Source of the DNA: Lytechinus pictus
Taxonomy: Eukaryota
Length of the DNA: 64,000 nt
Assembly: GCF_037042905.1 (NCBI RefSeq)
Contig: NC_087248.1
Span: 5,642,001 to 5,706,000 of the forward strand
Direction: 5' to 3'
Made by a program: the position numbers and the translations under genes. Shown one piece after another: positions 5,728-55,604 of this stretch. A model generated the notes under the pieces. The model was not told where the DNA came from and ran no database searches. It worked only from the letters and a program-made list of their open reading frames with translations. Within the stretch, counting starts at the first letter, position 1, and the number at the start of each line of letters is the position of its first letter.

Positions 5728-5885
5728 NNNNNNNNNNNNNNNNNNNNNNNNNNNNNNNNNNNNNNNNNNNNNNNNNNNNNNNNNNNNNNNNNNNNNNNNN
5801 NNNNNNNNNNNNNNNNNNNNNNNNNNNNNNNNNNNNNNNNNNNNNNNNNNNNNNNNNNNNNNNNNNNNNNNNNNNNNNNNNNNNN
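5728..5885. other. Assembly gap (158 N)
   Basis: Run of n. Confidence 1.
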
Positions 5886-16522: not shown

Positions 16523-16695
16523 TTAAAGATGATGATTACGGGGGGGGGGGGGGCTCATCGAAATGTAGAAATTAAGGAAATATGAGAGTGGCAAGGGAAG
16601 GAGAAAGGAAGGGGAAGAGGAGTAGAGAGAGGGAAGAGAAAAAATGAGAGAGGGGTGGGGAGAGAAAGAGAGGAGAGGGATTAAAAGACAGTTAA

Positions 16696-17280
16696 AGGAC
16701 AAGTCCACCCCAACCATTAGTTGATTTGAATAAAAAGAGAAAATTCCAACAAGCCAACAAGCATAACACTGAAAATTTCATCAAAATCGGATGTAAAATA
16801 AGAAAGTTATGGCATTTGAAAGTTTTGCTTAATTTCACAAAACAGTTATATGCACATCCTGGTCGGTATGCAAATGAAAGACTGATGACGTCATCCACTC
16901 ACTATTTCTGTTGTATTTCATTATATGAAATATTCAAATTTTCTCCTCATTGTCAAGTGAAACAAAGATAAATTCCTCTCTGAACACGTGGAATTAGCAT
17001 TGTTCTAATACTTAATGGTTCAGTCAAGTTGTTTCTTATTGTCAAATCTGTAAAAAAATGAAATATTTTATAATTCAAACAATAAAAAACAAAAGAAATA
17101 GTGAGTGATGGACATCATCACTGAGATGTGTATATAACTGTTTTGTGAAAAATAAGCGAAACTTTTAAATGTCATAACTTTCTTATTTTACATCCGATTT
17201 TGATGATTTTTTTAGCGTTTTGCTAGTTTGATTTTTCTCTATTCATTCAAATCATCATTTTTCTGGGGTGGACTTGACCT
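16696..17280. mobile_element. TTAA-flanked Kolobok-like MITE, family 1, copy 1 (167 bp upstream of the GST ATG)
   Basis: TTAA|AGGACAAGTCCACCCC...GGGGTGGACTTGACCT; ~130-bp TIRs; five copies in the window. Confidence 0.85.
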
Positions 17281-17447
17281 TTTAAAATAAATATTGACTA
17301 TTTTATTCACTAGAACGAAGCCAAATAGTATGCGTCTGTAATGCTTTACAATTCCAAAGTCTAACAATTTCATCATGTCCCCTGACTGATTGTAATATTG
17401 ATATATAGTGATCAGAGGCCAGAGGGCCGGCATTTTCAGAATTCAAG

Positions 17448-20400
17448 ATGGCAGAAGGCAAACCTCGTCTAACATATTTCGCAGGTCGGGGGTTAGCTGA
17501 ACCCATTCGACTGGCTTTTTCAGCATCGGGAATCCAAGTAAGTATGGGGACAGGACTAGGACTCAAGATAAACACCAATCACCAAAGCGATATTTACAGA
17601 GTTTTTATACATTCATTGTTTGACACCCCAAGTCGGTGTTTTATTTCTGAATGGATACGAAACTGGTCAGTCTTTTCCCTTCAATCTCAAAACTGCAATA
17701 TTCAAGGATGGGGGGGGGGGGGGGGGGGGAGGGGGGTAAAGTTCTTATTTTTCTAATTCAATGAGGCTACCATAATCCAAAATAGAAACCCCCAAGCTTC
17801 TCTCTGATACCTTTCGTACCCCCGTTGTCATGCATGACTAAATTTATCTAGAAGACAACGGTATGGGTTTCACTTTTTGCAAGTTAGTGCAAAAAAAGTG
17901 AAGTGAGTGGTACCTTACTGTTATGGGAGTGCGTTCATCATCAAGGCAGACGAAAGGGCTAGAGGCCAATAAATAAATCTGTCATCTGACACTTGTGGTG
18001 GAGTGCGCACTGGAAGCGTTTTGAATTAAAAAAAAATGAAAAGGGATAGTTGCATCAGGTCCCATTTCCCCCACATATTATAATTATAGTAAATCAAAAT
18101 ACTTAAAATTGCCAGTAGTACACTAAAGGTGCAGTCATCGCCATTTTGATGTTTGTATGCAATTTGTTAATACTCTCACTTTAAATGTCATATCATTGTT
18201 TTCACTTTTTGATCTGCATGTATTTTATTTTCAGTATGAAGACGTTTACCTCGAATCGAGAGATCAGTTATTGCAGTTGATACAAGGTAGACAAGAAAGT
18301 GCTGATAATACAAAACAGACCAAAACGAAGAAAAATGGAGGGGGGGGGGGGGGGGCTAATCATGAAATAGAATAACCAGATTGTATTTTTTTTTCGTGTA
18401 CACGCGGCGTTTATTGAAAAAAGTGTGTGGGGGTGGGTGAGGGTGAAGACCCCGCCCTCCCTAGTTCAGTGGCCCATAACTCTTCTTTATTTTCGTTGAA
18501 CATGACATATACATCGAATATACCCACCAAGAAGCAAGTCGCAAGGGTCTGTATTTCTGGATACATGCAGTTTCATTATTTAAAATGGTGACTTTCGTTT
18601 CGTTAGTAATTACTAGAGAAACCATGCACTGAAACATTTTGGAAACTTTGCAATTATATACTTAATTTATCATTGAAAACTTTGAATTGATTAGAAGATA
18701 TTATCATCCCTTGTATTACATAGGAACCTAGTCTTTTGAACTGCACAGAAGCAATGAAGTAAATTGAGGTTTATTTTATCCATATTTATAGTAACTATCA
18801 CAAAAGCATTTACTATGAGAGTATGGTAGTTAAAAAAATGGCAAGTTACCACAGATCGAAGTAAATTCAAGAGAACTATGCCACTATGGTATTGTTTCAT
18901 TTTTTTTTAGATGGAAAGTTGATGTTCAAACAGGTTCCACTGCTTGAGGTAAACGGTCAGTGCTTGATCGGTGGTGAAGCCATTCTCAGATACGCATGTA
19001 GGGAGGGAAACTTAGAGGGAAAAACAAACGAAGAAAAAACACGGTTAGTATGTATTTTCATCATTCAGAGAGTAAGTGAGAAATATTTAATGTCTTAGGA
19101 CTTAAGGTCTGCTAAATGCACAGATTATTATTATTTTTTACTCATCTATATGCACAAGGATCGCCAAATGATATTTGAAGGGTACCCCAACCTGAAGCTA
19201 GGATGAAAAACTATCAAAATTAAATAAGCGAAAGACTGAAATTTCTATAAAAGTCTGATTTAGAGTAATATACATTTTGACACCCGGACGTTACGTTATA
19301 GTTTTTTTTGTGAACACATACAAAATTATTTTTGTTGTGCAACTTTCGTCGCATATCCAATTCCATGATCCTATTTTGTGGAAGAAATGTATATTATATG
19401 ACTGATAAATTTTCGTTGAGAAGATCGAATGTGTCTATAAATTTTAGACATGATTCCCTATAATCAATGCTCTGGTTTTTTTTGGCGAAATTTGTGCTAC
19501 AGAGTAGACATGCTGTCGATGGGGGCAAAAGACATGGAATTCCCAAACCTGATGTCACCAGCGTTTATCGAGGTAATAACATCAAAGGAAGCCGCTGATG
19601 AAGCACGTGAGAAGGGCGTCAAGGGGTGCAGAGAACGGTATCTACCAGTCTTTGAAAAGGTACTTAAAGGTCAAGTCCACCTCAGAAAAATGTTGGTTTG
19701 AATCAATAGAGAAAAATCAGGCAAGCACAATGCTGAAAATTTCATCAAAATCGGATGTAAAATAAGAAAGTTATGACATTTTAAAGTTTCGCTTATTTTT
19801 CACAAAATAGTTATATGCACAATTTAGTCACATGCAAATGAGAGAATCGATGATGTCCCTAACTCACTATTTTTTTTGTTTTTTATTTTTTGAATTATAC
19901 AATATTTCAATTTTTACAGATTTGACAATAAGGACCAATTTGACTGATCCATAAAATGTTAAACAATGGTAGTTCAGGGAGAAATAAAACTTTGTTTCAC
20001 AGGACAATGGGTAGAAAATTAGAATATTTCATATTTCATATAATAAAATACAAAGGAAATAGTGAGTGAGTGATGTCATCAGTTTCCTCATTTGCATACC
20101 GACCGGGATGTACATATAACTATTTTGTGAAATTAAGCAAAATTTAAAAATATCATAACTTTCTTATTTTACATCCGATTTTGATGAAATTTTCAGTGTT
20201 GTGCTTTTTTTATTTTTCTCTTTTTATTCAAATCCAACTTTTTGTTGGGGTGGACTTGTCCTTTAAAAGAGAGTGAGAGAATGAGAGGGATAGGGGGCTC
20301 TGAGAGGGGTTGGGAAAGGAAGAGAGGGGGATTGGAGGGGTTTCATTTTGGAAGTATCATGACTTTCATAGCTGGATAGAGGGATAGAGAAATACACGTA

Positions 20401-22782: not shown

Positions 22783-25631
22783 TTTAGATGACAATAATAA
22801 TTTAATAACAAGAATGGACACTTGTACAGTGCCTGTATCTGCTGTGTTTGGATGCTGTTTGACATTACGCTTAGACATTGTTATCCATGCCATTTTTCTG
22901 GTACATATTCATTTACACCTGGGTGGAGAGTGGCAAACATAGACAAATGACTAGCCAAAGGCCATTATTGCTGTGCTTGGATTTGAACACAGGACCTTTG
23001 GTTTAAAGCCCACTAATCCACAACATATCTCAGCCAATCAGATCAACAATTGAAAGTAGCTTAAAACAGTTGTTTTCATGATAAACATCATTTCAAGGAG
23101 CTTGTCATTACTGTGTCATCACTGACTGTATACTGTAGTGACAGTCAAACCCAGAATTTCACTATCAATATCACTGAATGCAAATTTTTATCATGACATA
23201 CAGAATGATGTAATATATAAGATATTCATTTTTCTCCAAATATACCACAGCAACAGATATGAAATCTGCCTGTGAATAAAAAAATCACAGGCAGACCTGT
23301 GGGATCCAAACATCCCCCAACAAATTAATTATTCCAATGATGACATACTGATGTAGTTCATGAAATGACGACTACAGCAATATAAGCATCTATTTCTGTG
23401 TAATCATGGTATGATATATCCTAAAATGGGGCATATAGTCAAGGCATGAAAAAAAAAAAAGTTGAATAAAGGGAACAAATAAAATAATTCAGGAAAACAA
23501 CAATAAACTGATAGACAAACACTCTATTCAAATAATTAACACTCTTTGGACTTACAATGCATGGACAAGCTGTATATAAAAATACACAACCCACAATATT
23601 GCATGTACAAGCAAAACTACACTAAAATTGGAACAAATCTGCCAACATAATACAACTCATGTGTCCTACAAAGCTGTGTATTAGCCTATTTTGTGCATCA
23701 TTCTTAAAGTGACTTGAAACAGTGATAATTGAGATCTAAGATAATTTATGATCATATGTGAGAAAAACTGTGACAAGGAACTGGTATGGTGTTTCATGTC
23801 ACATGACCATGGATAATACAGATTATGTAATGTGCCAGATGGGTGGTAGCCTACACATGTTATATGTTTTCTTTATAGGTCTGTCATGAATCAAGGAATA
23901 AAAAACATATTGTCATTTGGCTTTACAAAGATTTCTAAATGGAAACAGAAAAAATAAGAAATAGGTCTTCAGAATTGTGGTCATAATGACATGTTTATTG
24001 TTTGACAAAGGATTATTTAATTCATCCAAGTACTTTTAAAGAGATACTGAATTGAATTCCATCCAAGGTAGACACAAAACTGAAGTATACTCATCCATGA
24101 TACACCATTCTGCTTGGCACATATCAATGATGATAGTCAGATAGTCTATTACCCTGATTAATTCTAACCTGGCAAGATAGTGACTACATGTATGTAATAC
24201 TCAATGACACTTTAAACATGCTACATATATAAAGATGTGGTACAAAAACCGTTTCTTGTAAAACACACAGAATACAATCACCACAATAATCTAAAATACA
24301 AGTAATTTTTAAAATTAATAATCATACTATTCTGTTTCATTTTAAATAAATGTGTCTAGCAATAATAAATTTGAATAAATTAGAATTTTAAAAATCAGAA
24401 ATTTTCAATGTCAACAATTGATTAAAAGAATCTGAACAGTTGGTCCATTGATAACTAAAGTAGAACTATAAACATTCATAACAATATCATATAAATTTTA
24501 TATTATTTTTTCTGAACAGACTGTGATCTACGAAACAAAGACTGATTACACAGTTAAATACATAATATCTGTTAATAGGATCATAAATAATGAGTTGTAC
24601 ATTGATGTAATAAAGTTACCTACAAAATTGCAATCTAGTAATCTATTAATACTGATCCAGCAGCAAAATGGTCTAGTACTTTCTCCAAGTATAAGTTTAA
24701 CATTTCTATTTCTGATTACATGTCACAGCATAATCTTTAAAAACCCAACTGCAACAATTGAATATGATTTTATGATGAGTTTAATGATTTTCTCCATATT
24801 ATATCAATGCCAACATTCCACTGTGGATTGTAAAAAACGCACCATAAAATACTACTAAACAAAATGTTCCTACAATTCATAATTCATGTTATAATTATTC
24901 ACATGGACAGCCATATACATAAGTCATGCACAAATTTGTTACAGTAGAAATAATTTATCTGTGAAAACCAAAAAAGGAAAAATGTCTGCCTTAAGAGGGA
25001 CAGTATCAATACTCTCATGTTTCTTCACATGTGCTTCATCAATATATACTGGATGAGATTAGGATTGGGTTCATAATATTCTTCTTCCTCAGAGAAATAT
25101 TTCATTTGACAATTGATACAAAGTAAATACATGACTGCGTACTATTACCCCCGGCTTTAGCATGGCTACTCTTATATGAAAGTACTATTAATGAATCCAG
25201 GTCAGTGTTTTGAAAAAAATGTGTATGCAATTGCAAATATGATCTTAGTTGGCCATTGCAATTAGCAATCAAACTTTTGGTACAGGGCGAGGTATGCACC
25301 TTGTATGGCTTCTTAACTATCTTTACTTCTATTGAATATAAACACATTGTATGGCTGCCCCTAATTACATTTGCATATTTTGTATGCATTCACTAGCAAT
25401 CTCAACATTTATATTTAGCATCCAAGTACAGTTGTAGTACTTCTTTAAATAAAATTTTATGTCAAGGTAATAAAAAATGCAGAATGTTGAGTTTAAGTAG
25501 CATATATCATTATTCACTGCATGAAAAGGAAATAATTGTAGAATATACTACATAACTACGATTGTACATGTCAAATAAAAAATGTGATCATACTAGTATA
25601 ATACAATTATCTTATGAAGATTGTTTTCATC

Positions 25632-26116
25632 TGTGTTATTGATTATCCTATCAAAGGAATGCTTTTGAATATTGAAATATTATTGTGTGAAATTTTTCAA
25701 ATATGTTCTTATTAAGAACAAGGAAATATAGAGAATTTAATGATAAAGGAGAATTTGTAACCAGTCCCAGCAGCATATCTCATAAAACTTTCTAGCCTGG
25801 GTAAGCACTGAAAACAAACCTCTTTCAGTATTTAACTCCGGGGTAAAGTCTTGAAAGCATACCCCCTTCCAATTTGTGTTATTGATTATCCTATCAAAGG
25901 AATGCTTATGAATAGTGAGATGTTATTATGTGAAATATTTCAAATGTGTTCTTATTAAGAACAAGGAAATATAGAAAATTTAATGATAAAAGGAGAAAGT
26001 GTTACAAGTCCCAGCGGCATATCTCATAAAACTTTGCCCTAGGCAAGCACTGAAAACAAACCCCTTTTAATATTTAACTCCGGGGTAAAGTCTTGAAATC
26101 ATACCCCCTTCCAATT
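25632..26116. repeat. Diverged ~243-bp tandem duplication
   Basis: TGTGTTATTGATTATCCTATCAAAGGAATGC at 25632 and 25875; both copies end CCCCTTCCAATTT. Confidence 0.85.
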
Positions 26117-26337
26117 TCAGGGAATGTAACTTCTTTGTTTGCTCATTGCAACACTGCAGTTTTATTTCCCTCAATATCCCTTTTTGTGCCTTGCTGAAAG
26201 TTGGGCCAGGGCACATGCCTCTTTGACCCCCTAGATTTCCTACTGTGGTCATCTGAACTATTTTAGTCACATTAGTACATTGCTTTTATCCACAAAGTTG
26301 GAAGAGATCTTGAATCACTCATCCTCGCATGTGCCAG

Positions 26338-26506
26338 GAGCCGTTTCATAAAGCTGTTTGTAAGTTGAGAGCGACTTTAAGAACGACTGGTGAACCTTCT
26401 TACGTGCTAAACCATTGCCAATGAACATTATGGTGTATATCATTTTTACTACAAGAAAGGATCACCAGTCGTTCTTAACTTACGAACAGCTTTATGAAAC
26501 ACCAAC
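26338..26506. mobile_element. Short Harbinger-like MITE with CAG TSD
   Basis: GTTTCATAAAGCTGTT...AACAGCTTTATGAAAC inverted repeat; CAG on both flanks. Confidence 0.65.
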
Positions 26507-26612
26507 CAGGATAAATTATCCCCCTCTAATTGAGAAATTCGTATTTTTCGATTAGAAGAATTTGACTAAATAGCAGAACGTAAGAAGAAATGAGAATGAA
26601 CTGAATTGTATC

Positions 26613-29600
26613 CTACCAAAGGGGATGTTTTTTAAACATGCCTTGCCATTTCGTGGACTCTGCTTCATGCATCCGTGTGTTGAGGAATGTCATCTTTACA
26701 TTCAAATCAGTCATACCCTACATAAATAGAAATGAAAATAAAATAAAAGTCATTCATTAATGTTGAACCAGATAGGGTACACCTGTACATTAAATACTGT
26801 CCATTAATTTCAATTTATTTTAATTTAATCACCACAACAAATATATACACAACAATCATAGCACACATTATTACAACATTAAAAATATGGCTTGGACCAC
26901 ATAAAAAAGAGCAAGTTGCTTGTAAACGTATGAAAGGTTCCCTAATGAATGTTTCAATGGGGGGGGGGGGGGAACTATTCATGGGAAAAACACCATTCGT
27001 CTTCTAAACAACAGGTGGTCACTAACTAAAAGCACATTGGATTGAATCTTCCTTGGTCATATATTACACAAGACAATGAATGATAGCTGTTACCAGATTA
27101 GATGGGATTGGAAGTCAAGGGATTCTTGACACCTAGTCTAGATATTCAAAGTTTGCACTTGGAAATAAAATTAGCTTAAAAATCTTTATCAAATTAAACT
27201 GACTACATTTTGTTTTTCATTGAGATTTATTATAGACTGTGAGAAAAGACTCTGTTGAGTCTATGACAAAGATATTAATAAGGATAATATAAAAGTCTGG
27301 ATTACCTTTGCAATGGTGGCTTCCCTTTTAGTTTTCATTTCAGGGACAGCCTGCTCTAACTTGTCAATCTGTAAAAAGAAATATATTGATACATTTAGTT
27401 GATGGTAGTTCAACTAGAAAAGCATGGCTAGGTAAGGGGTGCAGTTGAACATCTAGACAATGCAGATTAAACCAAGAATCATTAAAGGACAAGTCCACCC
27501 CAACACAAAATTGATTTGAATAAAAAGAGAAAAATCCAACGAGCATAACATTGAAAATTTCATCAAATCGGATGTAAAATAAGAAAGTTATGACATTTAA
27601 AGTTTCGCTTAGTTTCACAAAACAGTTATATGCACATCCTGGTTGGTATGCGAATGAGGAGACTGATGACATCATCCACTCACTATTTCTTTTGTATTTT
27701 ATTATATGAAATATTCGAATTTTCTCCTCATTATCAAGTGATTAATTCCTCCCTGAACATGTGGAATTAGCATTGTTTAATACTATATGATTCAGTCAAG
27801 TCGGTCCCTATGGTCAAATCTGTAAAAAATGAAATATTGTATGATTCAAACAATAAAAAAACAAAAGAAATAGTGAGTGATGGACATCATCGACTGAGTC
27901 ATTTGCATGTCACTGAGTTGTGCATATCACTGTTTTGTGAAAATTAAGGGAAACTTTAAAATGCCATAACTTTCTAATTTCACATCCGATTTTGATGAAA
28001 TTTTCAGTGTTAAGCTAGTTTGATTTTTCTCTATTTATTCAAATCAACATTTTGCTGGGGTGGACTTGACCTTTAATAAAAATAATTGCTTCACTGCATA
28101 CTTGCTGAATAGATGGTACTCTTGAAAATCCCATATTAATTAATTAATGAAAAGTACTATACAAAAAAGGGTTAAAACTCTATTAAAAGAAAAGCAATGA
28201 AACTAAAAGTTATGGAATGCCCTTGGACTTGATACTCACTCTCTTAACAATCTGCTGCAACCTTTGCTTGATAATATCATTGTAACCATTTATCTTCACT
28301 GATCGCTTCATGGGCTTAACTGTTTGGAAAACAATACAGAAATTATACTGATGTGTTGAAATAGTAAATTGTTCAAAATTTACTATTTATTAGGCATTCA
28401 CTCATTGAAGGCTGACACACATTCATGTTTTCACTGTTACATACATTACTTACCCACAGAGTTCTGAATAAAATTCCATGCATATTAATAATTTATTAGA
28501 GGATAAGTAGGCTTTTGAAACTTATATTCACTTTTTCTCAATAATTATTTCCAATTTAATTTTTGAATTTCTTTCACATAAAATTTCCAATTTACTGTCA
28601 GCAAAAGTAATGTGATGGAAGAAGTTTGTATTACTCGTCATGGACATGATACAATAACATTAATACTGCAAATTATTCCATATTAATATAGAATAATTGA
28701 AAATTCTGCTATGATGACATACATGTAGACAATCCAGTTTGAAATGAAAATAGGCTTATACCTTGGTCACATTTGCTCTACGGCTGCCGAACGGTGAGTC
28801 GAAAACAGACGTTTTATTAATTTTATATCATTCCACCTATATGTAGCTGGTACAAACAAAATTAAAACTGCTGTTTTCAACTCGCCTACGGTCGCCGTAG
28901 AGCGAATGTGACCGAGGTATTAATAGGCTAAAATAACGATCTGTACACAGATATATACCGTACCACACTACCACTTCAAATGAATAATAGATTTACTAAT
29001 GATATGAATTATAGATTTAACTTATGATAAAAAAGAGATAAAATCAGATCAGATTCATACATACCATTCTGGTAACGTCTTGTGACTTCAAGGACATATG
29101 GTCTGTTGGAGAAAGTGTTAAAAATAGAAAATGTTAGAAAGAAATATAGTGCCAACACACATTCCAGATAAATGAAAAATATTTAAAAACTGTTAACATA
29201 AAAAAATCAAATGAAATTGTATAACACAGTGCATTACTGTCCAGCTAGAGATCATATTTGATTACATGTAAATAATTTTGATTTTCACATGTTATGTGTA
29301 CTGCAATTCCAATAATCTGTATTGATGTAAACCCAAAGTATTCTTTTGGTGCACATGAATTTACAAACATGAAAAGTAAGATACTCACTGAAACTTTGAA
29401 TTTGGTGTGATGAATCCATTAATTGGGATGAGAGAACCACGGTTGTTACGAAGCTGTAAATATAAGAATTTGCCTTGTTATAAAAACTATTAAAGGCACA
29501 CCAAGAGTCCGCTCATATGCTCTCATGTTCATAATTAATTGAAATCTATTGATTGAGATTAACGTTAATGAACCAAAATTGTTACAAATATGTAAAGAAA

Positions 29601-31062
29601 AAAACATCAATCAAATTATTATAAATAATGTAGATGATTGATAGCACTAGGATGAACAAAATTGTTGAATAAAATTACAATTAAAGACTGGAATGGCTCT
29701 CAAACATTAATAGAAATTAATAGACTGAGAGAAATCTGCACCACTTAAAAATATTAATTTCTCTCAAAGCAAAGGCTTCCAAGTAAATCCCAATAACTTG
29801 CTTCACACTATTACACATAAAAATGTAATCACTTATGAAATCTGCATCCATTGTTCTCAGTCTCAATTATACCTCTAAAATAAATGTATTTTGAGAGATT
29901 GTCTAACCATCACATCTTAATGCAGCCCCAGGATGCACTATACATTATAGAGGCACGTAACAAATGCATGAATTAAAGTTGAATTTTGAAAAGATATTTT
30001 CACTTTAATAATCTGAAACCTTTTGAACTTTCTATTATTACCTTCAAAGAAAAATTTTCATCATGATTTCCCTATTTTGAAGAGATGTGGAATGACAAAT
30101 TTGCAACTTAATTTGCAAGAGATTAATAATCTGAAGCCTGATGGACCTTTCTTACCTTCATAACCAAGTTTTCATCTTGTAATGCCAGACTAACCCTGAA
30201 GATATCTTGAATCTCTGGGGTGGGGCTCTCTTGAGGTAAAATCACACACCGTGGAACAGATTTTGATTTGTCTTCTATCTCAGCTATTTAAAAAAAAAGG
30301 TATAAAAGTCGTGAAAAAGAAATATTGAAGTTACTACATGTAGTAACTTGACTTGGCTTAAGCTGAAAATCAACATTTCAGCAGAATTGCATGTCAGTAA
30401 AATGAGGAAACTGAAACACAGTTTGAACCTAAAGTACCATAATTGATAATAAGAACTGAACATTTTGGTCACGACTCATGCATGTGTGTAAAAGAAAAGA
30501 GGCAAAAGCAAAGTCTAATTCTCCTTCATTACTTGACCTTTAACGTCTTCAGTTCTACCAATAGAGTCAATAACATGCCTTCCATAATTAAATCATCAGA
30601 GAGGGATTTTGTCTGCGAATCAGCGATTTTTAGTGTGTGGGTTTTGCCTTTTTTTTTAGCCCTTCCCCTTTTCAATCTCATTTAGATCTATTTCATTATC
30701 TGCTCTCCAATATTTTCCCCACCCCTGCCAAATTCAAATTACAGTCACAACATATCTAGAATGCATTGCATTTCACTGTCATAATTCAGCAACATGACTC
30801 AATATGTGATGACATCAGCCAACATCAAACTGAACGCGTGGGGCTGGCCACATTATGTTACTCAACACTGCAGACGTCTGTCAGTAATTGGGCTCGTCTT
30901 ACATCATTTATCTCACCAAAAATCACTTCCAAAACTTCATCAACAGAATTCAAAATCACTACATAACATTGAGAGTTGAAAAAAATACTCACATGACAAA
31001 TCATTGCGGTGTATGATGACCCAAACACGGTTGAGAGAAGATGCCTTCCTGTCAGTGGCCAT
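26613..31062 (-). CDS. Uncharacterised 182-aa protein resembling the PDE9A N-terminal region plus coiled coil; no catalytic domain
   Basis: Exons (transcript order) 30993-31062, 30156-30283, 29389-29453, 29065-29102, 28240-28319, 27306-27368, 26613-26717; all GT-AG with consistent phases. Protein: MATDRKASSLNRVWVIIHRNDLSSEIEDKSKSVPRCVILPQESPTPEIQDIFRVSLALQDENLVMKLRNNRGSLIPINGFITPNSKFQPYVLEVTRRYQNVKPMKRSVKINGYNDIIKQRLQQIVKRIDKLEQAVPEMKTKREATIAKGMTDLNVKMTFLNTRMHEAESTKWQGMFKKHPLW*. Confidence 0.85.
27486..28072. mobile_element. Kolobok-like MITE family 1, copy 3
   Basis: TTAA at 27482-27485 and 28073-28076; same TIRs as copy 1. Confidence 0.88.
28759..28919. mobile_element. Harbinger/Tourist-like MITE with TTA TSD
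   Basis: TTA|TACCTTGGTCACATTTGCTCTACGGC...GCCGTAGAGCGAATGTGACCGAGGTA|TTA. Confidence 0.75.
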
Positions 31063-33354
31063 AGTTAATGTTTGGATCGCGCTGCTCTGTGTCTCAGTTC
31101 ACCGGTACCAATCTAGTTGCGACTGTACCGGTACTGTGAAACCATAGAGCTATATTAGCTCCATGGTAAAACATATCCCCTATGTTATGTGTGTATAAGT
31201 GGTTTTTGGACTCAATGGTTTTCAGTCGTAAATAATGAAATCGGTTTCATCGAATCAGGGAGGTGGAATTGGAAGGAGAGACATATCAAATTAATTAATT
31301 GAATACGGGAGCGGGATTAAAATAAGAGATATATAGAATTCTTCCTAATTTTATTCGTACTTATATACTGTTTGGTTTAATTTAATTGGCTTAATCGTTT
31401 ATTTTCATTTCTATATCCATTTTCAACATTAATACAAAAATATATATACAAATCAAAATAGCTACGCCTGCAGACAAATATAAACTAAAATAACGAGCCC
31501 AATAACAAATGAGTAATAATTACCCCCAAAAAAACTTCAGTTCTAAAACAAAGAATTTAACATTTTCAAAAGTATATGCATTTGTTGTTGTTCGGGCGAA
31601 ATAGGCATTAAAAAATAATAGAATTAGAAATGAAGAAAGGGGCCAACTAAAATGCGATGCCTGTATAAGGCTGGTCTCTCAAAATCATAAGAAATACTTT
31701 GAGAACGCAAACAAAAATATCAAGGGGTACTCCAGGCTGAAAATGATATTGAACAGATAAAGAAAAATCAGACAGACAGAACACTGCAAGATTCCATCAA
31801 AATCAGACCGTATAGGAATATGCCTAACAACTGAAGCCACTTATGAAATTTTAATGATTTGTATTAGTTCGGTGAAACAGTTCTATGCATGTCTTCGTGA
31901 TCATTCAATGAGCAAACTGATGTTGTCATATTCCCACTTGTTCTTTGTCCGGCCAAGAACGGAATAAACAAAAATGGATTGACAATTGATTCAATGCATT
32001 AGATAATCATTTTCAGATATATTTAGTGTAATGTTGGCCTTGTTGGGTCAATATAGAAGTAAAAGTATCATGGAAGACCAGGGGCATGCAGCCGCAACGC
32101 GCGCGAGGGGGGGGGGGGGATCAGTAAGGACAGGTACGTACTCGAGCATTCTGTTCCCGATTAAAAAAAGAAAGAAAATGCTTAGAATGCCCAGTGTTCA
32201 GGTCGGATATCACAAATTTTCAGCTCGCACTTCGCGCTCACATTATTCGATTGGTGAGATATGTATCATATTCATGAGTCACAATATGCAGTCCTTAACT
32301 TTTTTTTTTGGCTTTGCTCCCCAAACGAAAATACATTCCGCCGCCCCTGTGGAAGACTGACGTGATTCGGTAGCTATGTATTAAAGTAAAAATTTTCAAT
32401 ATTGGTCTATATAGCCAATTATATAAAAATTATGGGAAATTGTTAAACATTATGTTGACAGTATGTTCCTAGAATGGTCTTAAACTCAATTGGGACATAT
32501 TGTATCCCAAATAATATTAATAAAGTTCTGGCAAAAGGAATAGGCCTACAAGAATATACAAATAGAAGATTAATTAAAGACCCATTTACCGATGGCCAGA
32601 AGATGGCCAAAAGGACACTAGTTCCTATTAAAGTTTCTTTCATCACTGGTCAAACAAACATCATCATCATCATCATCGTTTAAAAACACATCAAAATGTC
32701 ATAAAAATATAAGTCAGCTCAGGGCCGGGTACTTGGCAGGGGGGGGGGGGCAGGGCTTAATTTCTAGAATCACAAATTTCTTCAATCTTTCCAAACGCCC
32801 GTTCCACCTCTTAACCTTACTAATCGATAAGAGAAAACCTTGAGGGGATCGGGGATCAACACCCCATGGACCTCTAATACCAATCAATCAATCATTCTCA
32901 CTCGCGAGCGAGCTCCCCAAGCAACAGGTCTTTTACCCCTGTTGTTTGGCGATCGCGTAGCAACAGTAAACGCTCATTGGTTTTACGTGTACCGGTACTG
33001 ACCGCAACCCCGTGCTCTCGCGACTGAAGTAAACAATATTTTTACCTTCATTACATTAGGCAAAATATCACATGAATCATCAAAGGGATCATCCAAATAT
33101 TCTTTTATCTATTGGAAAATATTGGATGCTAAATTGGAACCTGCTATTTTTGTGAGAAAACTTGTGAAATTGTCATTAGTTTACTCGGTTGAAGCCCGGA
33201 AGAGATTTTTCTTTCAGCGGTTCACGATCAGACTTTGAGCCTGGCCTGCCGGCCTAGGTTTTCGTGGGACGCCAAGGTCAGCCTAACGCCCACTGTGCTA
33301 ATGAGATTTTGAGGGTGCTTGGCTTTACTGAAACTTGAAGAAGCAGCCTTGGAC

Positions 33355-36300: not shown

Positions 36301-38615
36301 GCGTACATACATTTATGTAATAATAATAATAATAATTGGCATTTATATAGCGCTTTATCAATCTACGACTGTTCAAATATGTAAAACATATTGTCTATTC
36401 ACCATTCATTTTCAGTTTAAATAAGAAGATTTAAAATGTGCATTGAAAACAAAGAGTCTTTAGGGAGACTTCTCCAATCTTATTCACACTTTGTTTCTAT
36501 TTGTTTGTTTCTTCCAGTGAATTCAGTATGGGAGAGAAGAGGTGAGTTTCCTGCTGCTTCTGGTGGTGATAAAAGCTACCAGGCCCCAGAATATTCTCCA
36601 AACTTCCATCATTATGGTTCTACCAGACCAGTCGTAACGTTCGGGTAAGTCTCTATTAGGATTGACATCATTCTATGTAACCTCACTGTTTTAAATGCCG
36701 GAATGTACATATTGCTAAAGGGCGCGGAATGGTTTTGAAAGGGGGGGAAGGCGCTGACCAAGAAAAAACAAACATGATCAGGGGCCTGTAAAACAAAGCT
36801 TAGCAATGATCGTAGAACATTTTTCTACGATTGATTCCATTGGCTACAATGTACAATCAATCGTAGAAATCAAGCGTACGATTAATCGCGAACCTTTGTT
36901 ACGGGACCCTGATGGTCATGTTTTTACATTTTGTACACGGTTTTGAAAAAAAGGGGGGGGGGGGGGGCTGAAGCCTACCCAGCCCCTTCCCCCGTTTCCG
37001 CGGCCCCAGTTGCTAGTTTGATTTAAATGAAATAAATTGTTCTTGTGAAACAATAGATGTAGATTGAGGATGAAGATTTGTAAAGGGTTTATAATATGAA
37101 TTATGCTGACATTCCAATCTTACAAATTCTTTTTTCAATTCCTTGATTCTCTTTTGGAAAATCATAGGTTAGATTTTTTTAGTGCCCTCAGTAATCTTTG
37201 TATTTTTCTTAAAAAGGGCCATTCAGGAACTTATCTTACAAATTTACTGATTGGATATAAAAAAAGTTACGTGCAAAGATAATGTCCTAACATCTTCAGT
37301 CAATGCAATGCTTGAGAAAGTTTAAAAAACAAAAAACATATATTTTACTTTAGTTGGGTACCTGTTGGCTTCGATTGATACACATTAGTCTCTCAGAGCT
37401 AACTAACTGTGGTGTGAAAAGAGTTAACTTATTTACCAACCTTTCTTTTGTTTCCAGTGGTACTATCAAATTAAAACCTGACACATTCGTTCCGCTTCAG
37501 GACCTACCGACAGAATACTGGTGAGTTTTGTTTCCTCAATTCACAATGTCATAGAATCAAATAAATAATCAGGAAGTAGCTTCAACCATTTCAATCACCT
37601 GCGTATGAATATCACTTGTCAAATCTCTCTATTGAAGTCTTTACAGACACTGAGTTTACCCTGTACTGTACTATGTGAAATGTAAATGAAAACAACAACT
37701 GGAAGGGGATGAAACAATTTTCTATGACATATTAAATAGAAAAAAAACATGGATAAAGACATCTAGACTCTTGCCTATAAAAAAAAGTAAAGTAAGAATT
37801 TAAGAGAAAAGGACAGTGTATCAGAATTGTCATCGGATATGTTTAAAGGTCAAGTCCACCCAAGAAAAATATTAATTTGAACAAATAGAGATAAATCAAA
37901 CTAGCATAACACTGAAAATTTCATCAAAATTGGAAGTAAAATAAGAAAGTTATGACATTTTTAAGTTTCGCTTATTTTTCACAAAACAGTGATATGCACA
38001 ACTCAGTGACATGCAAATGAGACAGTCGATGATGTCCCTCACTCACCATTTCTTTTGTTTTATTATTGTTTGAATTATACAATATTTCATTTTTTTTACA
38101 GATTTGACCATAAGGACCAACTTGACCAAACCATATAGTATAAAAAATGCTAATTCCACATGTTCAGGGGGAATTAATCATTGTGTCACTTGACAATGAG
38201 GAGAAAATAGGAATATTTCATACAATAAAATACAAAAGAAATAGTGAGTGGACGATGTCATCAGTCTCCTCATTTGCATACTGATCAGGATGTGCATATA
38301 ACTGTTTTGTGAAATTAAGCAAAACTTTGAAATGTCATAACTTTCTTATTTTACATCCGATTTTGATGAAATTTTCAGCGTTATGCTTATTGGATTTTTC
38401 TCTATTTATTCAAATCAACTTTGTGTTGAGGTGGACTTGTCCTTAAAATATGTGTTCCCTTTGTATTTTATCATTATTATTTTACCCTCTTTTTGTTTTT
38501 CAGTGAGCCTTTCAATATGAAGGAAAGGAGAAGGAAATATGAAACTGAAGTAGATTCTGTTATCAGCCTCAATGACTGGAAACCAGCACCTCAACTCCTA
38601 GCAACGTCCTTCTGA
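33355..38615 (+). CDS. SPATS1: Spermatogenesis-associated serine-rich protein 1-like, 253 aa, 7 exons
   Basis: Exons 33355-33400, 34042-34180, 34728-34834, 35558-35725, 36518-36644, 37458-37520, 38504-38615; in frame. YPEEVTLPKL, EWTTYP, YHIGRRC, GDKSYQAPEYSPNFHHYGS, KPDTFVPLQDLP and LNDWKPA align with recalled human SPATS1 YPEEFSLLKL, EWTFYP, YHVGKQC, GDNPYMYPEQSKGFHKAGS, KFDTFIPLEPLP and LDNWQPA. Confidence 0.85.
34948..35379. repeat. 216-bp tandem duplication in SPATS1 intron 3, identical by eye
   Basis: 34948-35163 repeated at 35164-35379. Confidence 0.9.
36782..36908. mobile_element. Short Harbinger-like MITE
   Basis: CAG|GGGCCTGTAAAACAAAG...CTTTGTTACGGGACC|CTG with internal palindrome. 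Confidence 0.6.
37847..38443. mobile_element. Kolobok-like MITE family 1, copy 4
   Basis: TTAA|AGGTCAAGTCCACC...GGTGGACTTGTCCT|TAAA. Confidence 0.85.
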
Positions 38616-39820: not shown

Positions 39821-39824
39821 TTAA

Positions 39825-40425
39825 AGGTCAAGTCCACCTCAGAAAAACGTTGATTTAAATCAATAGAGAAAAATGAGACAAGAATAATGCTGAAAATTTC
39901 ATCGAAATCGTATGTAAAATAGGAAAGTTATGGCATTTTAAAGTTTCGCTTATTTTTCAGAAATTAGTTATATATTCACAATTTAGTCATATGCAAATGA
40001 GAGAATCGATGATGTCCCTCACTCACTATTTTGTTTTTATTGTTATTTGTTTAAATTATACAATATTTCAATTTTTACAGATTTCACAAAAAGGACCAAC
40101 TTTACTAAACCATTAATGTTGAACAATGGTAATTCCACATGTTTAGGGAGAAATAAAACTTTGTTTCACATGACAATGAGGAGAAAATCTGAATTTTTCA
40201 TATGTCATATAATAAAATACAAAAGAAATAGTGAGTGATGTCATCAGTTCCCTCATTTGCATACCAACCGGGATGTGCATATAACTGTTTTGGGAAATTA
40301 AGCGAAACTTGAAACTGTCATAACTTTCTTATTATAAATCTGATTTTGATTAAATTTTCAGTGTTTTGCTTTTTGGATTGTTTTCTTTTTATTCAAATCA
40401 ACTCTTTGTTGGGATGGATTGTCCT
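39825..40425. mobile_element. Kolobok-like MITE family 1, copy 5
   Basis: TTAA at 39821-39824 and 40426-40429; same body as copy 2. Confidence 0.85.
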
Positions 40426-42431
40426 TTAATGATAGCAGCCATTGTTAACATTTATCGATGAGATATCCACAAAGAAAAAAAAATGTACCTAAGAATTACA
40501 AATGTTATCATTCCATGCTGATAAACAATCACAGAGAACATTCTTGAATTCTAGAAAAGACTTGGCATATTTATTACTTTTCTAATTTCATCTATTAAAC
40601 ACTGATATTTACATAAGCTGTGTTAAGGCCGAACCTTTTACAGATCTTCAATACATTTAGGTATTATTTCTTGTATTGAATAAAATCCATTCCATTTAGA
40701 GTATGAAATATAAATGCCTTTTGAATTTACATGCATTTAGTTATTAGTACAGTAGGAAATCTGTGACGACCTCTACATGATATAAATTTCTGCGAGATTT
40801 AGTTTTGTAAGACACATCATTCTGTATTTTCCGTTACATATTTTTATACTGAAATGTCAAATGTTTGTACATGTAGATTAGAATATTTAAATATTTACTA
40901 CATCTGAATCATCAATCAACTCTCTTTTTTTTATACATCTTTCATGATTTCATGTCATCTAATTTTATAATACCATGTAAATGTACATAGGTACCGTAAG
41001 CATTGCTACATTAACAAATGAATGTAACCTTTTTTACTTGTAAATATTCTCTACAGGACAACACTGTCCTTTTTAGAAATAAATATGTTTGAAATATAAA
41101 AAAACCATATTTACATTGTGTTTTCTTGTATATGGATGTCTCCTCTTCTCCCTCTCTGTACAAAACAATGTGGGTTGTGTCAGATTAGATAAGAACATGA
41201 GGTTGTAAAATAACCAATTAGAAGACCTGACAAACAGAGTGCATCTACATGTAGTCTTTATGAATCAGGAACCAGTTTCATAGTGTCCACACAGATAGAT
41301 TGGACGAGGATGTGAAACAATCCTACAGAGTCTAGCGAGAAAGAAAGACCATCTACTCAATATATTTTAAATCATTTCAATGAGAGTTCTACATACACTG
41401 TATGTGAAGTAAAATGGCATATCATGAGCTACAATATAATAATAATAAAGGTATATTTACCCAAGGTAGCCACTTCAGTTCCGAAAACTGTTCTCCCAGC
41501 GGGCCCTGCTATTGATATGATCTGATATGATTTTGAATTTCTTAGTATTTTAGAAATGAAATGTGCTTCCAATATTTCAATCCTTCCTTGAGTCATAAAT
41601 ATTCAAGTCCTTTGTTGTGCATAATTGCCATTTTAAGGCTGTTTTGGCAAAATGCTAGCTAATATTGGACCACACATTCATGATTACATGGTATGAGGTT
41701 GTCATGCCTTTTTTCTTGCCATATTCTTATGCATAAGGACACCGTTTCATGAAGTTTTCAACACCGACAAGTTGTAATCTCCTGACAGTAAAGGAACAAT
41801 TTGAGGTCGGTGTTTTTCCACTAATCAAAACCAACAATTTCACTTAAATTGTAAGAGCTGATAGTTTTATCAGTGCTGATGACTTTCAGGAAACACCATC
41901 CTGATGTTGAAACGATGTGCAAGTTCAAACAAATGATCAATTATTCCAAAGGAGAATGACCTTTGCATTTCATTACGTGTACAATCAAACTGAGGCTATG
42001 TTAATAAATCCAAAGATAGATAGATGATGTCCCTCTATCTATGGTATACAAAAGCACTCTTAAGCACAGAAGCACTCTTAAACCTACTTCAATATGAAGA
42101 GATTCACATTTCCAATCATGATTTCATATACTTGTAGCAAATTACGTCATAGGTGTATGAGAGTGATTTATCAAATGGTTGCATGGATCACGAAGCAAGT
42201 GTTATAAATCTTTCAAATCTTTGAGAAGATAACAGATCAAAGCCAAAATTATCCACACTGAAACACAATGATCCTTTAGAGGCTTGAGACAAAAGAACCA
42301 AAGCGACACAAGCAGTTCTTGGCTTGCAGTTCTCTCCTTTATCTCTTTGACTAGTCTTGCAAGTCAAGCTGCTTCGTCACAGGAGTCACTGAAATAAGAG
42401 TTCACTCCACACATTCTTAGCTTTGTTTCAG

Positions 42432-45400
42432 TCAGACGAGCTTGATGGTGTTTATCCTCCTTGGAGCAGGAGCCACAGGTTTTGGAGGCATGACGATCGG
42501 CTTCGGAGGCATCTGGACCTGCTTCACAGGAATGTCTTCCTTGACTTCCATCTCTTCTGCTTCATCGCTATCACTCTCTGCAGTCAAATCAACCACGTCT
42601 TCATTGTCCTCATCATCATCGTAATCATCTTCGTCATCTTCATCGTCGTCGGGTATAATGATGTCTTCATCTGCTTCACTGTCTTCATCGGGTACAGTGT
42701 TTATACCAGATACAGAAGGAACATCATTCTGCTGGTTGCTAGGTGTGGGTGTTGTCTTGACGCTGGATGACGACGGTGATGATGATGGATGATCTTCTTT
42801 TGAGGGTTGATTTGTAGAGGAGGAGGATGAGGATGAAGAATTTGCAGTTTGGTTGGAAGGTGGGGAGGACAATGTAGTCAACTGGATTCTCCTTGGTGGT
42901 GGCTTTGACCTAGAAAAAAAAAAAGTACAAATTTTTTTAAAATTGTATGAAAATACTTACTGCAATAATACAAATACCAACAGAAAAAATTGAAAGCTGA
43001 GTATTTCTATGAAATACAGACTCTACTTATAAGGATAAAAAATTATTTTTAGGATGTGAAAAAAAAGTACTCCAATAAAATCAGATGGCAGAAGAAAAAA
43101 ACAATCCATAATTAGTAAATAGGGTATCATAGTAGAAGTTGGTAATACACTTATACACAGATCAAACTAAAATACTGATTTCCAAACTAGAAAAAATTGA
43201 TTTCATTTCATTTGGGTGCAGAGAGAGGGAGAGTTTTTTTTGTGAAAGCCTCATATTCCATCACAAAACATTTATGATAAAAACTGTTCTTTCAAAGGAG
43301 TGGGTAACCAAAACCCTAATTCCTTTTTTCTTGACTTACCCAGGTGGTCCTGATATCATTACTGGTGTGATCCTCTTGGGTTCCTTTGCTCCATTCATTC
43401 CTACAGGTTTGACACTCGTAGAGGCTGGGTGATTAGGCAACGTGCCATTAGAAACCGGTTGCTGATTTGCTGGTTTAGAAATCCCTGCAGCCTGATTGGG
43501 TGATTTTGAAATCCCTGCAGTCTGGTTTGGTGACTTTGAAATCTCTGTGACCACGTTGGGTGATTTTGAAATCCCTGTATTCTGATTGGGTGATTTTGAA
43601 ATCCCTGCATTCTGATTGGGTAATTTTGAAATCCCTGCATTCTGGCTGGGTGATTTTGAAATCCCTGCATTCTGATTGGGTGATTTTGAAATCCCGGCAT
43701 TCTGATTGGATTGGACCTGAGATACTGCAGCAGCAGGTGCAGGAGTAGGTGAAGGTGAAACCTTTGTAGTAACAGATGCAGCGGGTGAAGGGGTAGGGAC
43801 CGGTTGAGAGACGTATGGAACACCAAGTTCATCAGGTTCAAAGGTCACAAAGGAGCAGTAGCCGTCTGTTGATGAGACAGCTAATATCCTGCCATCGGAT
43901 GACCTGTAAAGGATATATAAAGCGTATGAAAGATTCAATTCAATTGGAACATTACATGATCATAATTACATACAAAGCCAATGCCCCAGCAAAAATGAGG
44001 GTAGGAGAAAAAAGCAAATCAAATTTAAAAAAAGAACAAAGATTGGATTTTATTACATAAATATATAATAATAATAATACAGAGTATTTCTAAAGCGCCA
44101 AATCCACATTGATTATGTGCTCAAGGCGAGAAAACCGTGTTCATTACTTTTCTTGAAACTTAATACTTTCTTTGTGGATTAAAATAAAAGAAAATGTAAT
44201 GCACACACAAACTACAGTCCCATGTATTACTAACCATGTGACATCACTGAGCTGATGATAGTGGATGTTTGAGATGAGACCAAATGGAATGCTTTGCTGG
44301 GTATCATATAGGAGCAGAGAGTCCTCCGTTGCTACGGCAAACACCATCCGATAAGGCAAGCTGATGAGAATATCACAAATCAAACATTAATATCATAAAT
44401 GAAATATGTTAGGTTGCATGTATCAGGGTAATAAAGACATAATATTTACATAAAAAAACATTTAAAATGATGTAACACACACAAAAACAATAAATGCTGA
44501 AACCCACACACACATCATTAACAAATACCAGCAAATGCACATTTCACAAATATATTACTTCAAGAGCTTTCTCTAAAAAGCATTTAAAGCGACCTTTTAT
44601 TGACAAATCATGGGGAAATTAAGGCTTATCTCAGAAAAGAGAAGGGATTCAAGTCTTTCACTCGGCTGCATGCCTGGGGGTGTTATGTAATAGACGCTGG
44701 CATGTCTGGGAGGTCTGTAGGAGAGCAATAGTTAGTAGACTAACCAACCAGAAGTAAACTGCATGTTTTCACTTTGAAACATGTAACTTCTCAGAGGTTA
44801 TGTATTTTGGTTTAGCAATCAAGAGACCTGCTATGAGTCTAGGAATTGGGATTGTTGGAAACTGGAACTGCGATGATCCGAAGAAAATAACCATCACGAG
44901 TTCGGTCAGATTCGCGCTGTCCGAACTTTTATCGCATTAGTCCGACGGGCGCTCATGACGGATGGATTATATTATGCAAGTCAACTGGCCTTTTGCAAAT
45001 TTTGTATTGATTCAATTTCCCCATGATTTGTCAGTGGCTGGGCCCTTTAAGATATTGCAATTCAATGCAAGTGCTGAAGAAAGCTGCTGGGTATTTCCAT
45101 ACAACAATCAACCTTTTTTACTCCACAACACAAACTGCTAAAGCTATGATATTAAGAGATTAACAAATTTTCATGCAAACTTGAAAACAGAAACAAATAA
45201 TTTCAGGGTGGTCCCACATATGGACGGTCAGACATAAAAATTGTGTGTATTTGCTCCTTTTAAAAGCTTTAACAACTACAGAATCAAGTATGAAGTACTG
45301 AGGTTCTTACTCAAATAACTGTGAAGATTGATCCTTTGTCTCAGGCTCTGATGGTTTGGTAGATGATTTATCTTGAACATCTTTACTAGGATCCGATTTC

Positions 45401-55195: not shown

Positions 55196-55604
55196 CTGTA
55201 TATTAAATGAAAATTTTATGAATGAACATCGTGAAACCTTTGCAATGATGCATCTGATTTACTTGTTCATGTTCACTGCAGAAATAAAATCACTCTTACT
55301 TTTTCAAGAAAATTGTATTTTATAGGTTAGTTTTTTTTGTGAAAATAGAGATTCTAGCAATTTAGTGCTGTTTCAGGAATTTTTATAGTGATTAAAAAAA
55401 ATAACCTGGTCCTGGTGTTGTGACATAGGTGTGGATCTACATGTAGTTGAAGTAGATATAGTTAAAACAAGCAACTTGGGACTAGGTCTACTTCACACTT
55501 GAACTCAATATTACATGACATATTATGGGATTTATTAGGGTATTTTTCTACAGTCTACACATCGTTTCGTTTTGTAAATATGGTCACCTATATTGTGCAC
55601 TTAA

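What the first reader, a model, noticed from the sequence alone, without database searches (positions are those of the whole stretch)
26613..31062. Stand-alone PDE9A-N-terminus-like protein with no phosphodiesterase domain
Seen: a clean 7-exon, 182-aa gene missed by the ORF track because its exons are short. From recall, CVILPQESPTPEIQDIFRVSL...LIPINGFITPNSKFQPYVLEV aligns with human PDE9A [20 protein letters not shown]...[22 protein letters not shown], and RSVKINGYNDIIKQRLQQIVKRIDKLE aligns with [26 protein letters not shown]. The gene stops at WQGMFKKHPLW* and I find no class I PDE catalytic exons before the convergent GST gene. Inference: a ubiquitin-like fold plus coiled coil that could act as a non-catalytic partner, anchor or dominant-negative regulator of PDE9-type cGMP phosphodiesterases. 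It is head-to-head with the sperm gene SPATS1, which is suggestive because cGMP drives echinoderm sperm chemotaxis.
Basis: partly seen in the sequence, partly recalled or inferred. Interest (0 to 1): 0.75.

Follow-up and report, generated by a model that had tools for sequence, protein, structure and literature searches.

The report
Small stand-alone gene resembling PDE9's front end
A real, transcribed seven-exon gene for a 182-residue basic protein with a heptad-repeat tail ends at its own stop codon with no phosphodiesterase domain, but its likeness to the front part of human PDE9A is only suggestive and could not be properly tested here.

Summary
Seven minus-strand exons (31062 to 26613) with canonical AG/GT borders splice into one 549-nt reading frame of 182 residues. 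RNA contigs from two runs match it without mismatch. They run straight through the stop codon and the GT at 26616 into collinear 3'UTR.

Stranded reads lie on the exons and downstream of the stop, and the introns have zero depth. So the main transcript ends here and does not splice on to a catalytic domain. The four exon differences listed for other individuals are all synonymous. No class I PDE catalytic motif occurs in any frame of the window.

The PDE9A likeness is not established. Exon-wise searches found nothing real.

One independent lead: the flanking genes (ATP5PO, CHAF1B) have human orthologues on chromosome 21, as does PDE9A. The ubiquitin-like fold, PDE9 regulation and the sperm link were not tested.

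Verdict: a real, apparently unannotated stand-alone gene, and a plausible but unproven relative of the PDE9 N-terminal region. Interest is moderate.

The parts
30993..31082 (-). Exon 1: at least 20 nt of 5'UTR (31082-31063) and CDS 31062-30993 (ATG at 31062; codons 1-23 plus 1 nt). Donor GTGAGT.
   Evidence: RNA contig X1 record 6 covers 30993-31082. In-frame stop 14 codons upstream.
30156..30283 (-). Exon 2 (128 nt, residues 24-66), the first block said to resemble PDE9A.
   Evidence: Laid in both RNA contigs with 0 mismatches.
29389..29453 (-). Exon 3 (65 nt, residues 67-88).
   Evidence: X2 record 11 piece 29389-29453. The listed difference at 29421 is synonymous.
29065..29102 (-). Exon 4 (38 nt, residues 88-101).
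   Evidence: The unlisted stretch of exactly 38 nt in X2 record 11 (record 361-398) fits it.
28240..28319 (-). Exon 5 (80 nt, residues 101-127), where the heptad-repeat helix starts (the KIN...KR block).
   Evidence: X2 record 11 piece 28240-28319. The listed difference at 28282 is synonymous.
27306..27368 (-). Exon 6 (63 nt, residues 128-148).
   Evidence: The unlisted 64 nt in X2 record 11 (record 217-280) equal 63 nt plus base 26717. The listed difference at 27351 is synonymous.
26613..26717 (-). Coding part of exon 7 (residues 149-182 plus TAG at 26615-26613). The GT at 26616-26615 is the unused candidate donor.
   Evidence: Both RNA contigs run through it collinearly. The listed difference at 26652 is synonymous.
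25250..26612 (-). 3'UTR. It is shown contiguous with the CDS down to 26482. Same-strand collinear RNA contigs and reads continue to at least 25250, and a 911-nt contig runs past the end of the stretch that was laid. The true 3' end is not determined.
   Evidence: contigs at 26088-26369, 25858-25975, 25704-25887, 25637-25733 and 25250-25586. X21 depth is 0.7-3.6 there against 0 in the introns. Poly(A) signal candidates.
26343..26500 (.). Palindromic MITE-like high-copy repeat inside the 3'UTR. It breaks the RNA assemblies.
   Evidence: Self-match in reverse orientation. Summed contig depth above 10,000 and many loose ends there.
27481..28077 (.). Foldback repeat of about 600 bp in intron 5, one of five copies in the window. 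It is not part of the transcript.
   Evidence: Very high summed contig depth on both strands.

Best explanation
This is an independent, transcribed protein-coding gene. It encodes a 21-kDa basic protein (pI 10). The N-terminal half (residues about 12-100, exons 1-4) is rich in beta-type hydrophobic patterns. The C-terminal half (about 105-175, exons 5-7) carries two heptad-repeat helices. Shown here: the protein ends at its own stop codon in the last exon and is followed by a long 3'UTR, and it carries no catalytic domain. Inferred: it most likely shares ancestry with the N-terminal, non-catalytic region of PDE9-type phosphodiesterases (my odds about 0.55). It could be a truncated or split derivative of an ancestral PDE9 locus, or a free form of a module that PDE9 carries fused. 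Inferred mechanism: the heptad helices pair with themselves or with a like helix in a partner, and the N-terminal domain supplies a docking or localisation surface. On that reading it acts as a non-enzymatic adaptor. Acting on PDE9 itself is only one possibility (about 0.1).
For: Gene model with canonical splice sites and a single open frame. Two RNA contigs match with 0 mismatches, join all exons and read through the stop and the GT at 26616. Stranded reads lie on the exons and downstream of the stop, and the introns are at depth 0. All four listed exon differences are synonymous. No PDE catalytic motifs occur in six frames of the 64-kb window. Heptad pattern: 7 of 8 a/d positions are hydrophobic in windows starting at residues 108-117 (spanning 108-144) and 140-146 (spanning 140-173). 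For PDE9 ancestry: the three recalled human blocks align in the same order, and 6 of 2000 shuffles reach the summed score. One of the blocks is confirmed as genuine human PDE9A sequence around K186 (PMC11833080), and that lysine-arginine pair is among the identities. The flanking genes are ATP5PO (OSCP exons) and CHAF1B (CAF1B propeller exons). Their human orthologues lie on chromosome 21, as does PDE9A (established knowledge).
Against: No profile, structure or full-length comparison with any PDE9 was possible. Identity in the aligned blocks is only about 20-27 percent, and the fragments were picked after the fact, so the shuffle figure is too favourable. phmmer with exon 2 against 1.84 billion representatives gave only spurious FG-GAP repeat proteins. 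Pfam, PDB and Atlas searches of exon pieces were blank. No orthologue from another species was obtained, so conservation rests on four synonymous differences within one species label, and 43 further differences were not listed. GST and SPATS1, the immediate neighbours, are on human chromosome 6, so the synteny signal is mixed. Minor isoforms that use the 26616 donor cannot be excluded, because the joint and loose-end tables were swamped by repeats.
Confidence: 0.55

Rival explanations
1. A lineage-restricted small coiled-coil protein with no relation to PDE9. On this reading the resemblance is chance similarity between a short alpha/beta segment and an amphipathic helix.
For: Individual block scores are weak: 4, 16 and 3 percent of shuffles reach them. 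No database hit of any kind appeared for exon pieces. Helical heptad segments align easily by chance.
Against: The three blocks are collinear. The summed score is rarely reached by shuffles. The gene sits between orthologues of human chromosome 21 genes.
Confidence: 0.33
2. The seven exons are the 5' part of a longer PDE9 gene. Its catalytic exons would lie beyond the GST and ATP5PO genes or outside the window, reached by splicing from the GT at 26616.
For: TG|GTAGGA at 26616 is a usable donor by sequence. In human PDE9A the catalytic domain follows directly after the aligned region (own knowledge).
Against: RNA contigs of two runs read through the site. Downstream same-strand depth is 0.7-3.6 while true introns are at 0. 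There are no PDE motifs anywhere in the window. Three genes of the opposite strand lie in the way.
Confidence: 0.04
3. A transcribed remnant: the leftover N-terminal exons of a PDE9 copy that lost its catalytic part, still spliced but without a function of its own.
For: Expression is low (a few reads deep in 1.3 billion letters read). Repeats have been inserted in the 3'UTR and in intron 5. The gene is absent from public protein sets as judged by exon 2.
Against: The 182-codon frame is intact. The stop lies in the last exon, so no nonsense-mediated decay is expected. All splice sites are intact. The four listed exon differences are all synonymous.
Confidence: 0.08

Closest known systems
N-terminal non-catalytic region of human PDE9A (UniProt O76083, roughly residues 11-230)
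   Same: The order of three similar blocks is the same: a V-I...D-[IL]-F block, a P-N-S...P-Y block and a K-I-N...L...K-R helix. The helix includes the position of K186, the CHIP ubiquitination site (PMC11833080). The length up to the point where the catalytic domain would start is similar. The human gene is on chromosome 21, like the orthologues of two flanking genes (plus own knowledge).
   Different: No catalytic domain follows, because the protein ends at its own stop codon. There is no N-terminal Met-Gly start. It lacks the roughly 75-residue low-complexity stretch that human PDE9A1 has between blocks 2 and 3 (my recall of the human sequence). Identity is only about 20-27 percent and is statistically unproven.
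Truncated, non-catalytic products of enzyme genes that act as adaptors or dominant negatives (a general class)
   Same: A regulatory or oligomerisation part is encoded without the catalytic part.
   Different: Here it is a separate gene with its own terminal exon and 3'UTR rather than a splice variant. No interaction has been shown.
Ubiquitin-like or doublecortin-like beta-grasp domains
   Different: Pfam found no such domain in the exon pieces. The fold was not predicted.

Membership tests
Class I cyclic nucleotide phosphodiesterase (PDE9 subfamily) | Catalytic HD domain (Pfam PF00233) with the H-D-x2-H-x-G metal-binding signature | tested here: not met
   Strict and loose motif scans of all six frames of the 64-kb window found none. 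The transcript ends in a 3'UTR after the stop. No profile search of every small open frame was done.
Class I cyclic nucleotide phosphodiesterase (PDE9 subfamily) | Significant sequence similarity to the PDE9-specific N-terminal region | tested here: inconclusive
Their scores are 24, 25 and 30, they are collinear, and 6 of 2000 shuffles reach the sum, with a post hoc selection bias. One fragment is verified as human PDE9A. The exon 2 phmmer search found no PDE.
Class I cyclic nucleotide phosphodiesterase (PDE9 subfamily) | Structural match of the N-terminal domain to the PDE9A model | not testable with these tools
Expressed protein-coding gene | Spliced transcript with one open frame, stop in the last exon, and constraint on the frame | tested here: met
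Coiled-coil protein | Heptad periodicity of hydrophobic residues over at least 28 residues with few Pro or Gly | tested here: met
   A crude a/d occupancy scan gives 7 of 8 in windows spanning residues 108-144 and 140-173, with P plus G at 1-2. No calibrated predictor was run.
Ubiquitin-like beta-grasp fold | Beta-grasp topology | not testable with these tools
   No model could be made. Pfam on exon pieces was blank.

The most novel reading that the evidence does not exclude
The front part of PDE9, which reviews treat as a region without a recognised domain, would be an autonomous ancient module. In echinoderms this module exists as a free protein that pairs through its heptad helices with PDE9-type enzymes or their anchoring sites. 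It would tune cGMP breakdown in trans, as an anchor, decoy or dominant negative.
Probability: 0.1. Interest if true: 0.7.

Novelty: new variant of a known kind. Interest (0 to 1): 0.4.

Why it matters
PDE9 is a drug target whose N-terminal region has no assigned domain or mechanism. A review figure marks it only as a variant-specific 'PAT7' part (PMC8589663), and it carries a ubiquitination site at K186 (PMC11833080). If a free-standing, selected homologue of just that region exists, the region would be a self-sufficient folding and interaction unit. That would give a natural handle for finding its partners. If the likeness is chance, the result is still a validated gene that exon 2 does not find in public protein sets. 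That is useful for annotation but ordinary.

Tried and rejected
1. phmmer of exon 2 (42 aa) against 1.84 billion representatives gave 22 hits. All eight checked by Pfam were bacterial FG-GAP repeat proteins scoring through several summed stretches, so they are spurious. This used the only job of that kind. It also shows that no protein closely matching exon 2 is in that library.

2. Pfam on five exon pieces gave nothing even at E 10.

3. PDB sequence search with exon 2 and exon 7 gave nothing at E 10.

4. The ESM Atlas feature search with exon 2 scored 0.67 at best, which is noise.

5. A comma-joined reference, tried to obtain the spliced protein as one query, is not accepted. I did not type the 182-aa sequence into any tool. 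As a result search for homologous proteins, structure prediction, fold search, the look-up of encoding contigs and the listing of cluster members were left out for the whole protein.

6. A search for an exon 2/3 junction pattern in metagenome contigs, hoping for a cDNA-like contig that would serve as a reference, gave 0 matches.

7. Earlier-findings look-ups for a PDE catalytic gene elsewhere in this genome, and for copies of exon 2, gave nothing.

8. Paper searches for a described PDE9 N-terminal domain or a sea urchin PDE9 found nothing relevant.

9. I considered reading the downstream RNA coverage as a retained intron. I rejected this because every true intron is at depth 0 in the same libraries.

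Full report
**What is there**

The seven exons are 31062-30993, 30283-30156, 29453-29389, 29102-29065, 28319-28240, 27368-27306 and 26717-26613. Each acceptor is a pyrimidine-rich tract ending in AG. Each donor is GTGAGT, GTAAGA, GTATGT or GTAATC.

The joined sequence is 549 nt and translates to 182 residues ending in TAG. An in-frame stop lies 14 codons upstream of the ATG. By my arithmetic a random frame of this length stays open about 1.6 times in 10,000.

**Transcription**

One search for runs and one laying of reads on 25250-31240 were allowed. Two RNA assemblies of the same organism label hold contigs (700 and 628 nt) that lie on the exons with no mismatch. The record stretches with no listed piece are 64 and 38 nt long. 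These are the lengths of exon 6 plus one base and of exon 4. Both contigs run collinearly through the stop codon and through the GT at 26616, down to 26482 and 26501. There a high-copy palindromic repeat (26343-26500) ends the assembly.

Two stranded rRNA-depleted libraries show reads with the first mate on + only, which means RNA of the minus strand.

- In X21 the bins that contain exons have depth of about 0.5-2.6.
- Depth is 0 in the bins that lie wholly inside introns and outside the repeats: 27050-27249, 28450-28649, 29650-30049 and 30450-30849.
- Depth is 0.7-3.6 in four of the five bins of the 1.0 kb from 26249 down to 25250, on the same strand. The 25850-26049 bin is at 0 there, though RNA contigs cover it.

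Further collinear low-depth contigs cover 26369-26088 and 25975-25250. One 911-nt contig runs on beyond the stretch that was laid. So the main product ends with this stop and has a 3'UTR of at least 0.13 kb, probably more than 1.4 kb.

The listed joint and loose-end tables were filled by repeat artefacts. The exon junctions therefore rest on the contigs, and a minor isoform using the 26616 donor cannot be excluded.

**Coding constraint**

The raw-read libraries come from individuals that differ from the window at four listed exon positions (26652, 27351, 28282, 29421). All four are third-position synonymous changes. About a quarter of random changes are synonymous, so this points to selection on the frame. 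The sample is small, and 43 further differences were not listed.

**No catalytic domain**

Strict and loose patterns for the class I PDE signatures found nothing credible in any of the six frames of the 64-kb window. The patterns covered the H-D-x2-H-x-G site, the A-T-D-M-x2-H site, F-H-N-x2-H and E-[EF]-[FY]-x2-[QGS]-[GS]-D-x-E.

Downstream on the opposite strand lie two other genes:

- a GST gene (17.4-20.9 kb; GST_N and GST_C exons);
- ATP5PO/OSCP (10.9-13.9 kb).

**The protein**

It has a mass of 21.2 kDa, a pI of 10.0 and a GRAVY score of -0.59. Hydrophobic residues occupy 7 of 8 a/d heptad positions in windows spanning residues 108-144 and 140-173, with few prolines or glycines. The N-terminal 100 residues have alternating hydrophobic stretches. 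The fold was not predicted.

**Is it like the PDE9A N-terminus?**

The spliced protein has no reference, and long sequences may not be typed. All whole-protein searches and the structure prediction were therefore left out, and no PDE9 sequence could be obtained.

Piece-wise searches were blank or spurious:

- Pfam on five exon pieces;
- phmmer of exon 2 against 1.84 billion representatives, which returned only FG-GAP repeat proteins;
- the PDB sequence search;
- the ESM Atlas feature search.

For a 42-residue query at about 25 percent identity, a blank is expected and says little.

What I could do was limited. A paper confirms that the peptide [13 protein letters not shown], with K186, is genuine human PDE9A (PMC11833080). 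This validates one recalled block and its numbering. The fragments fall at residues 36-55, 73-90 and 105-129, in the same order as in PDE9A.

Composition-preserving shuffles reach the individual scores in 4, 16 and 3 percent of trials, and the summed score in 6 of 2000. Because the fragments were chosen for looking similar, the true significance is weaker. My rough figure is between 0.01 and 0.1 once collinearity is counted.

**An independent lead**

The gene lies between exons of ATP5PO and of CHAF1B (CAF1B/HIR1 propeller exons at 43.3-55.3 kb). From my own knowledge of the human protein, the sequence reads as CHAF1B rather than HIRA. Human ATP5PO, CHAF1B and PDE9A are all on chromosome 21 (established knowledge). 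The immediate neighbours, GST and SPATS1, are on human chromosome 6. The linkage fits the idea that this is the old PDE9 locus or a derivative of it, but it is not proof.

**How it most likely works**

Shown here: a stand-alone, spliced, constrained small protein with a heptad-repeat tail and no enzyme domain. Inferred: ancestry shared with the PDE9 N-terminal region (about 0.55). Also inferred: a role as a non-enzymatic adaptor whose helices pair with themselves or with a like helix, while the N-terminal domain docks elsewhere.

A specific action on PDE9 is possible but unsupported (about 0.1). The sperm link rests only on a weak SPATS1-type exon 5.4 kb upstream (E 0.002). The papers I found do not tie PDE9 to sea urchin sperm.

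**Rivals**

- Chance resemblance in a lineage-restricted coiled-coil protein (0.33).
- A transcribed remnant without a function of its own (0.08).
- The 5' part of a longer PDE9 gene (0.04). The RNA evidence disfavours this.

**Novelty and score**

By exon 2, the gene is not represented in a library drawn from about 15 billion public proteins, so it is probably unannotated. If the PDE9 link holds, it is a new variant of a known kind: a regulatory region living as a separate gene. That would make the function of the undescribed PDE9 N-terminus testable. As the link is unproven, I score interest at 0.4.

The scan's other notes on this genome add nothing on phosphodiesterases.

Noticed in passing
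window 16692-17293, 19664-20266, 27481-28077, 37843-38447, 39821-40433: Five copies (82-90 percent alike) of a roughly 600-bp element. Each also matches itself in reverse orientation at about 72-76 percent, so it is foldback or large-MITE-like. RNA contigs matching it reach summed depths above 100,000, so the family is very abundant in transcriptome assemblies. One copy sits in intron 5 of the gene and two sit in or near the GST gene.
   Followed up: partly
window 26343-26500: A palindromic MITE-like repeat lies inside the 3'UTR of the gene. Its depth is very high, and RNA contig assemblies break there.
   Followed up: partly
window 10931-13902 (+) and 43339-55258 (-): ATP5PO/OSCP and CHAF1B exons flank the locus. 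Their human orthologues are on chromosome 21, as is PDE9A. The immediate neighbours GST (17.4-20.9 kb, +) and a SPATS1-type exon (36421-36645, +) correspond to human chromosome 6 genes.
   Followed up: partly
window 51479-54223 (+): An uninterrupted 915-codon open frame with the look of a non-LTR retrotransposon endonuclease plus reverse transcriptase. It lies inside a CHAF1B intron. I recognised it by eye only.
   Followed up: no
window 43339-43959 (-): The CHAF1B C-terminal exon holds about nine tandem copies of a 10-residue unit (consensus near [10 protein letters not shown]). This is a coding repeat expansion.
   Followed up: no
window 25740-26030: Two adjacent near-identical copies of an approximately 240-bp unit lie downstream of the stop codon. 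Raw reads were missing from the 25850-26049 bin, probably because they fit two places.
   Followed up: no
window 1-1140 (+): A 380-codon open frame runs off the window start. It has weak immunoglobulin I-set matches (below Pfam's cut-off), a Thr/Ser/Pro-rich stalk, a hydrophobic stretch and a short tail, so it is probably the last exon of an Ig-superfamily membrane protein.
   Followed up: partly
window 5728-5885: A run of 158 N (assembly gap or masked stretch). I left it alone.
   Followed up: no
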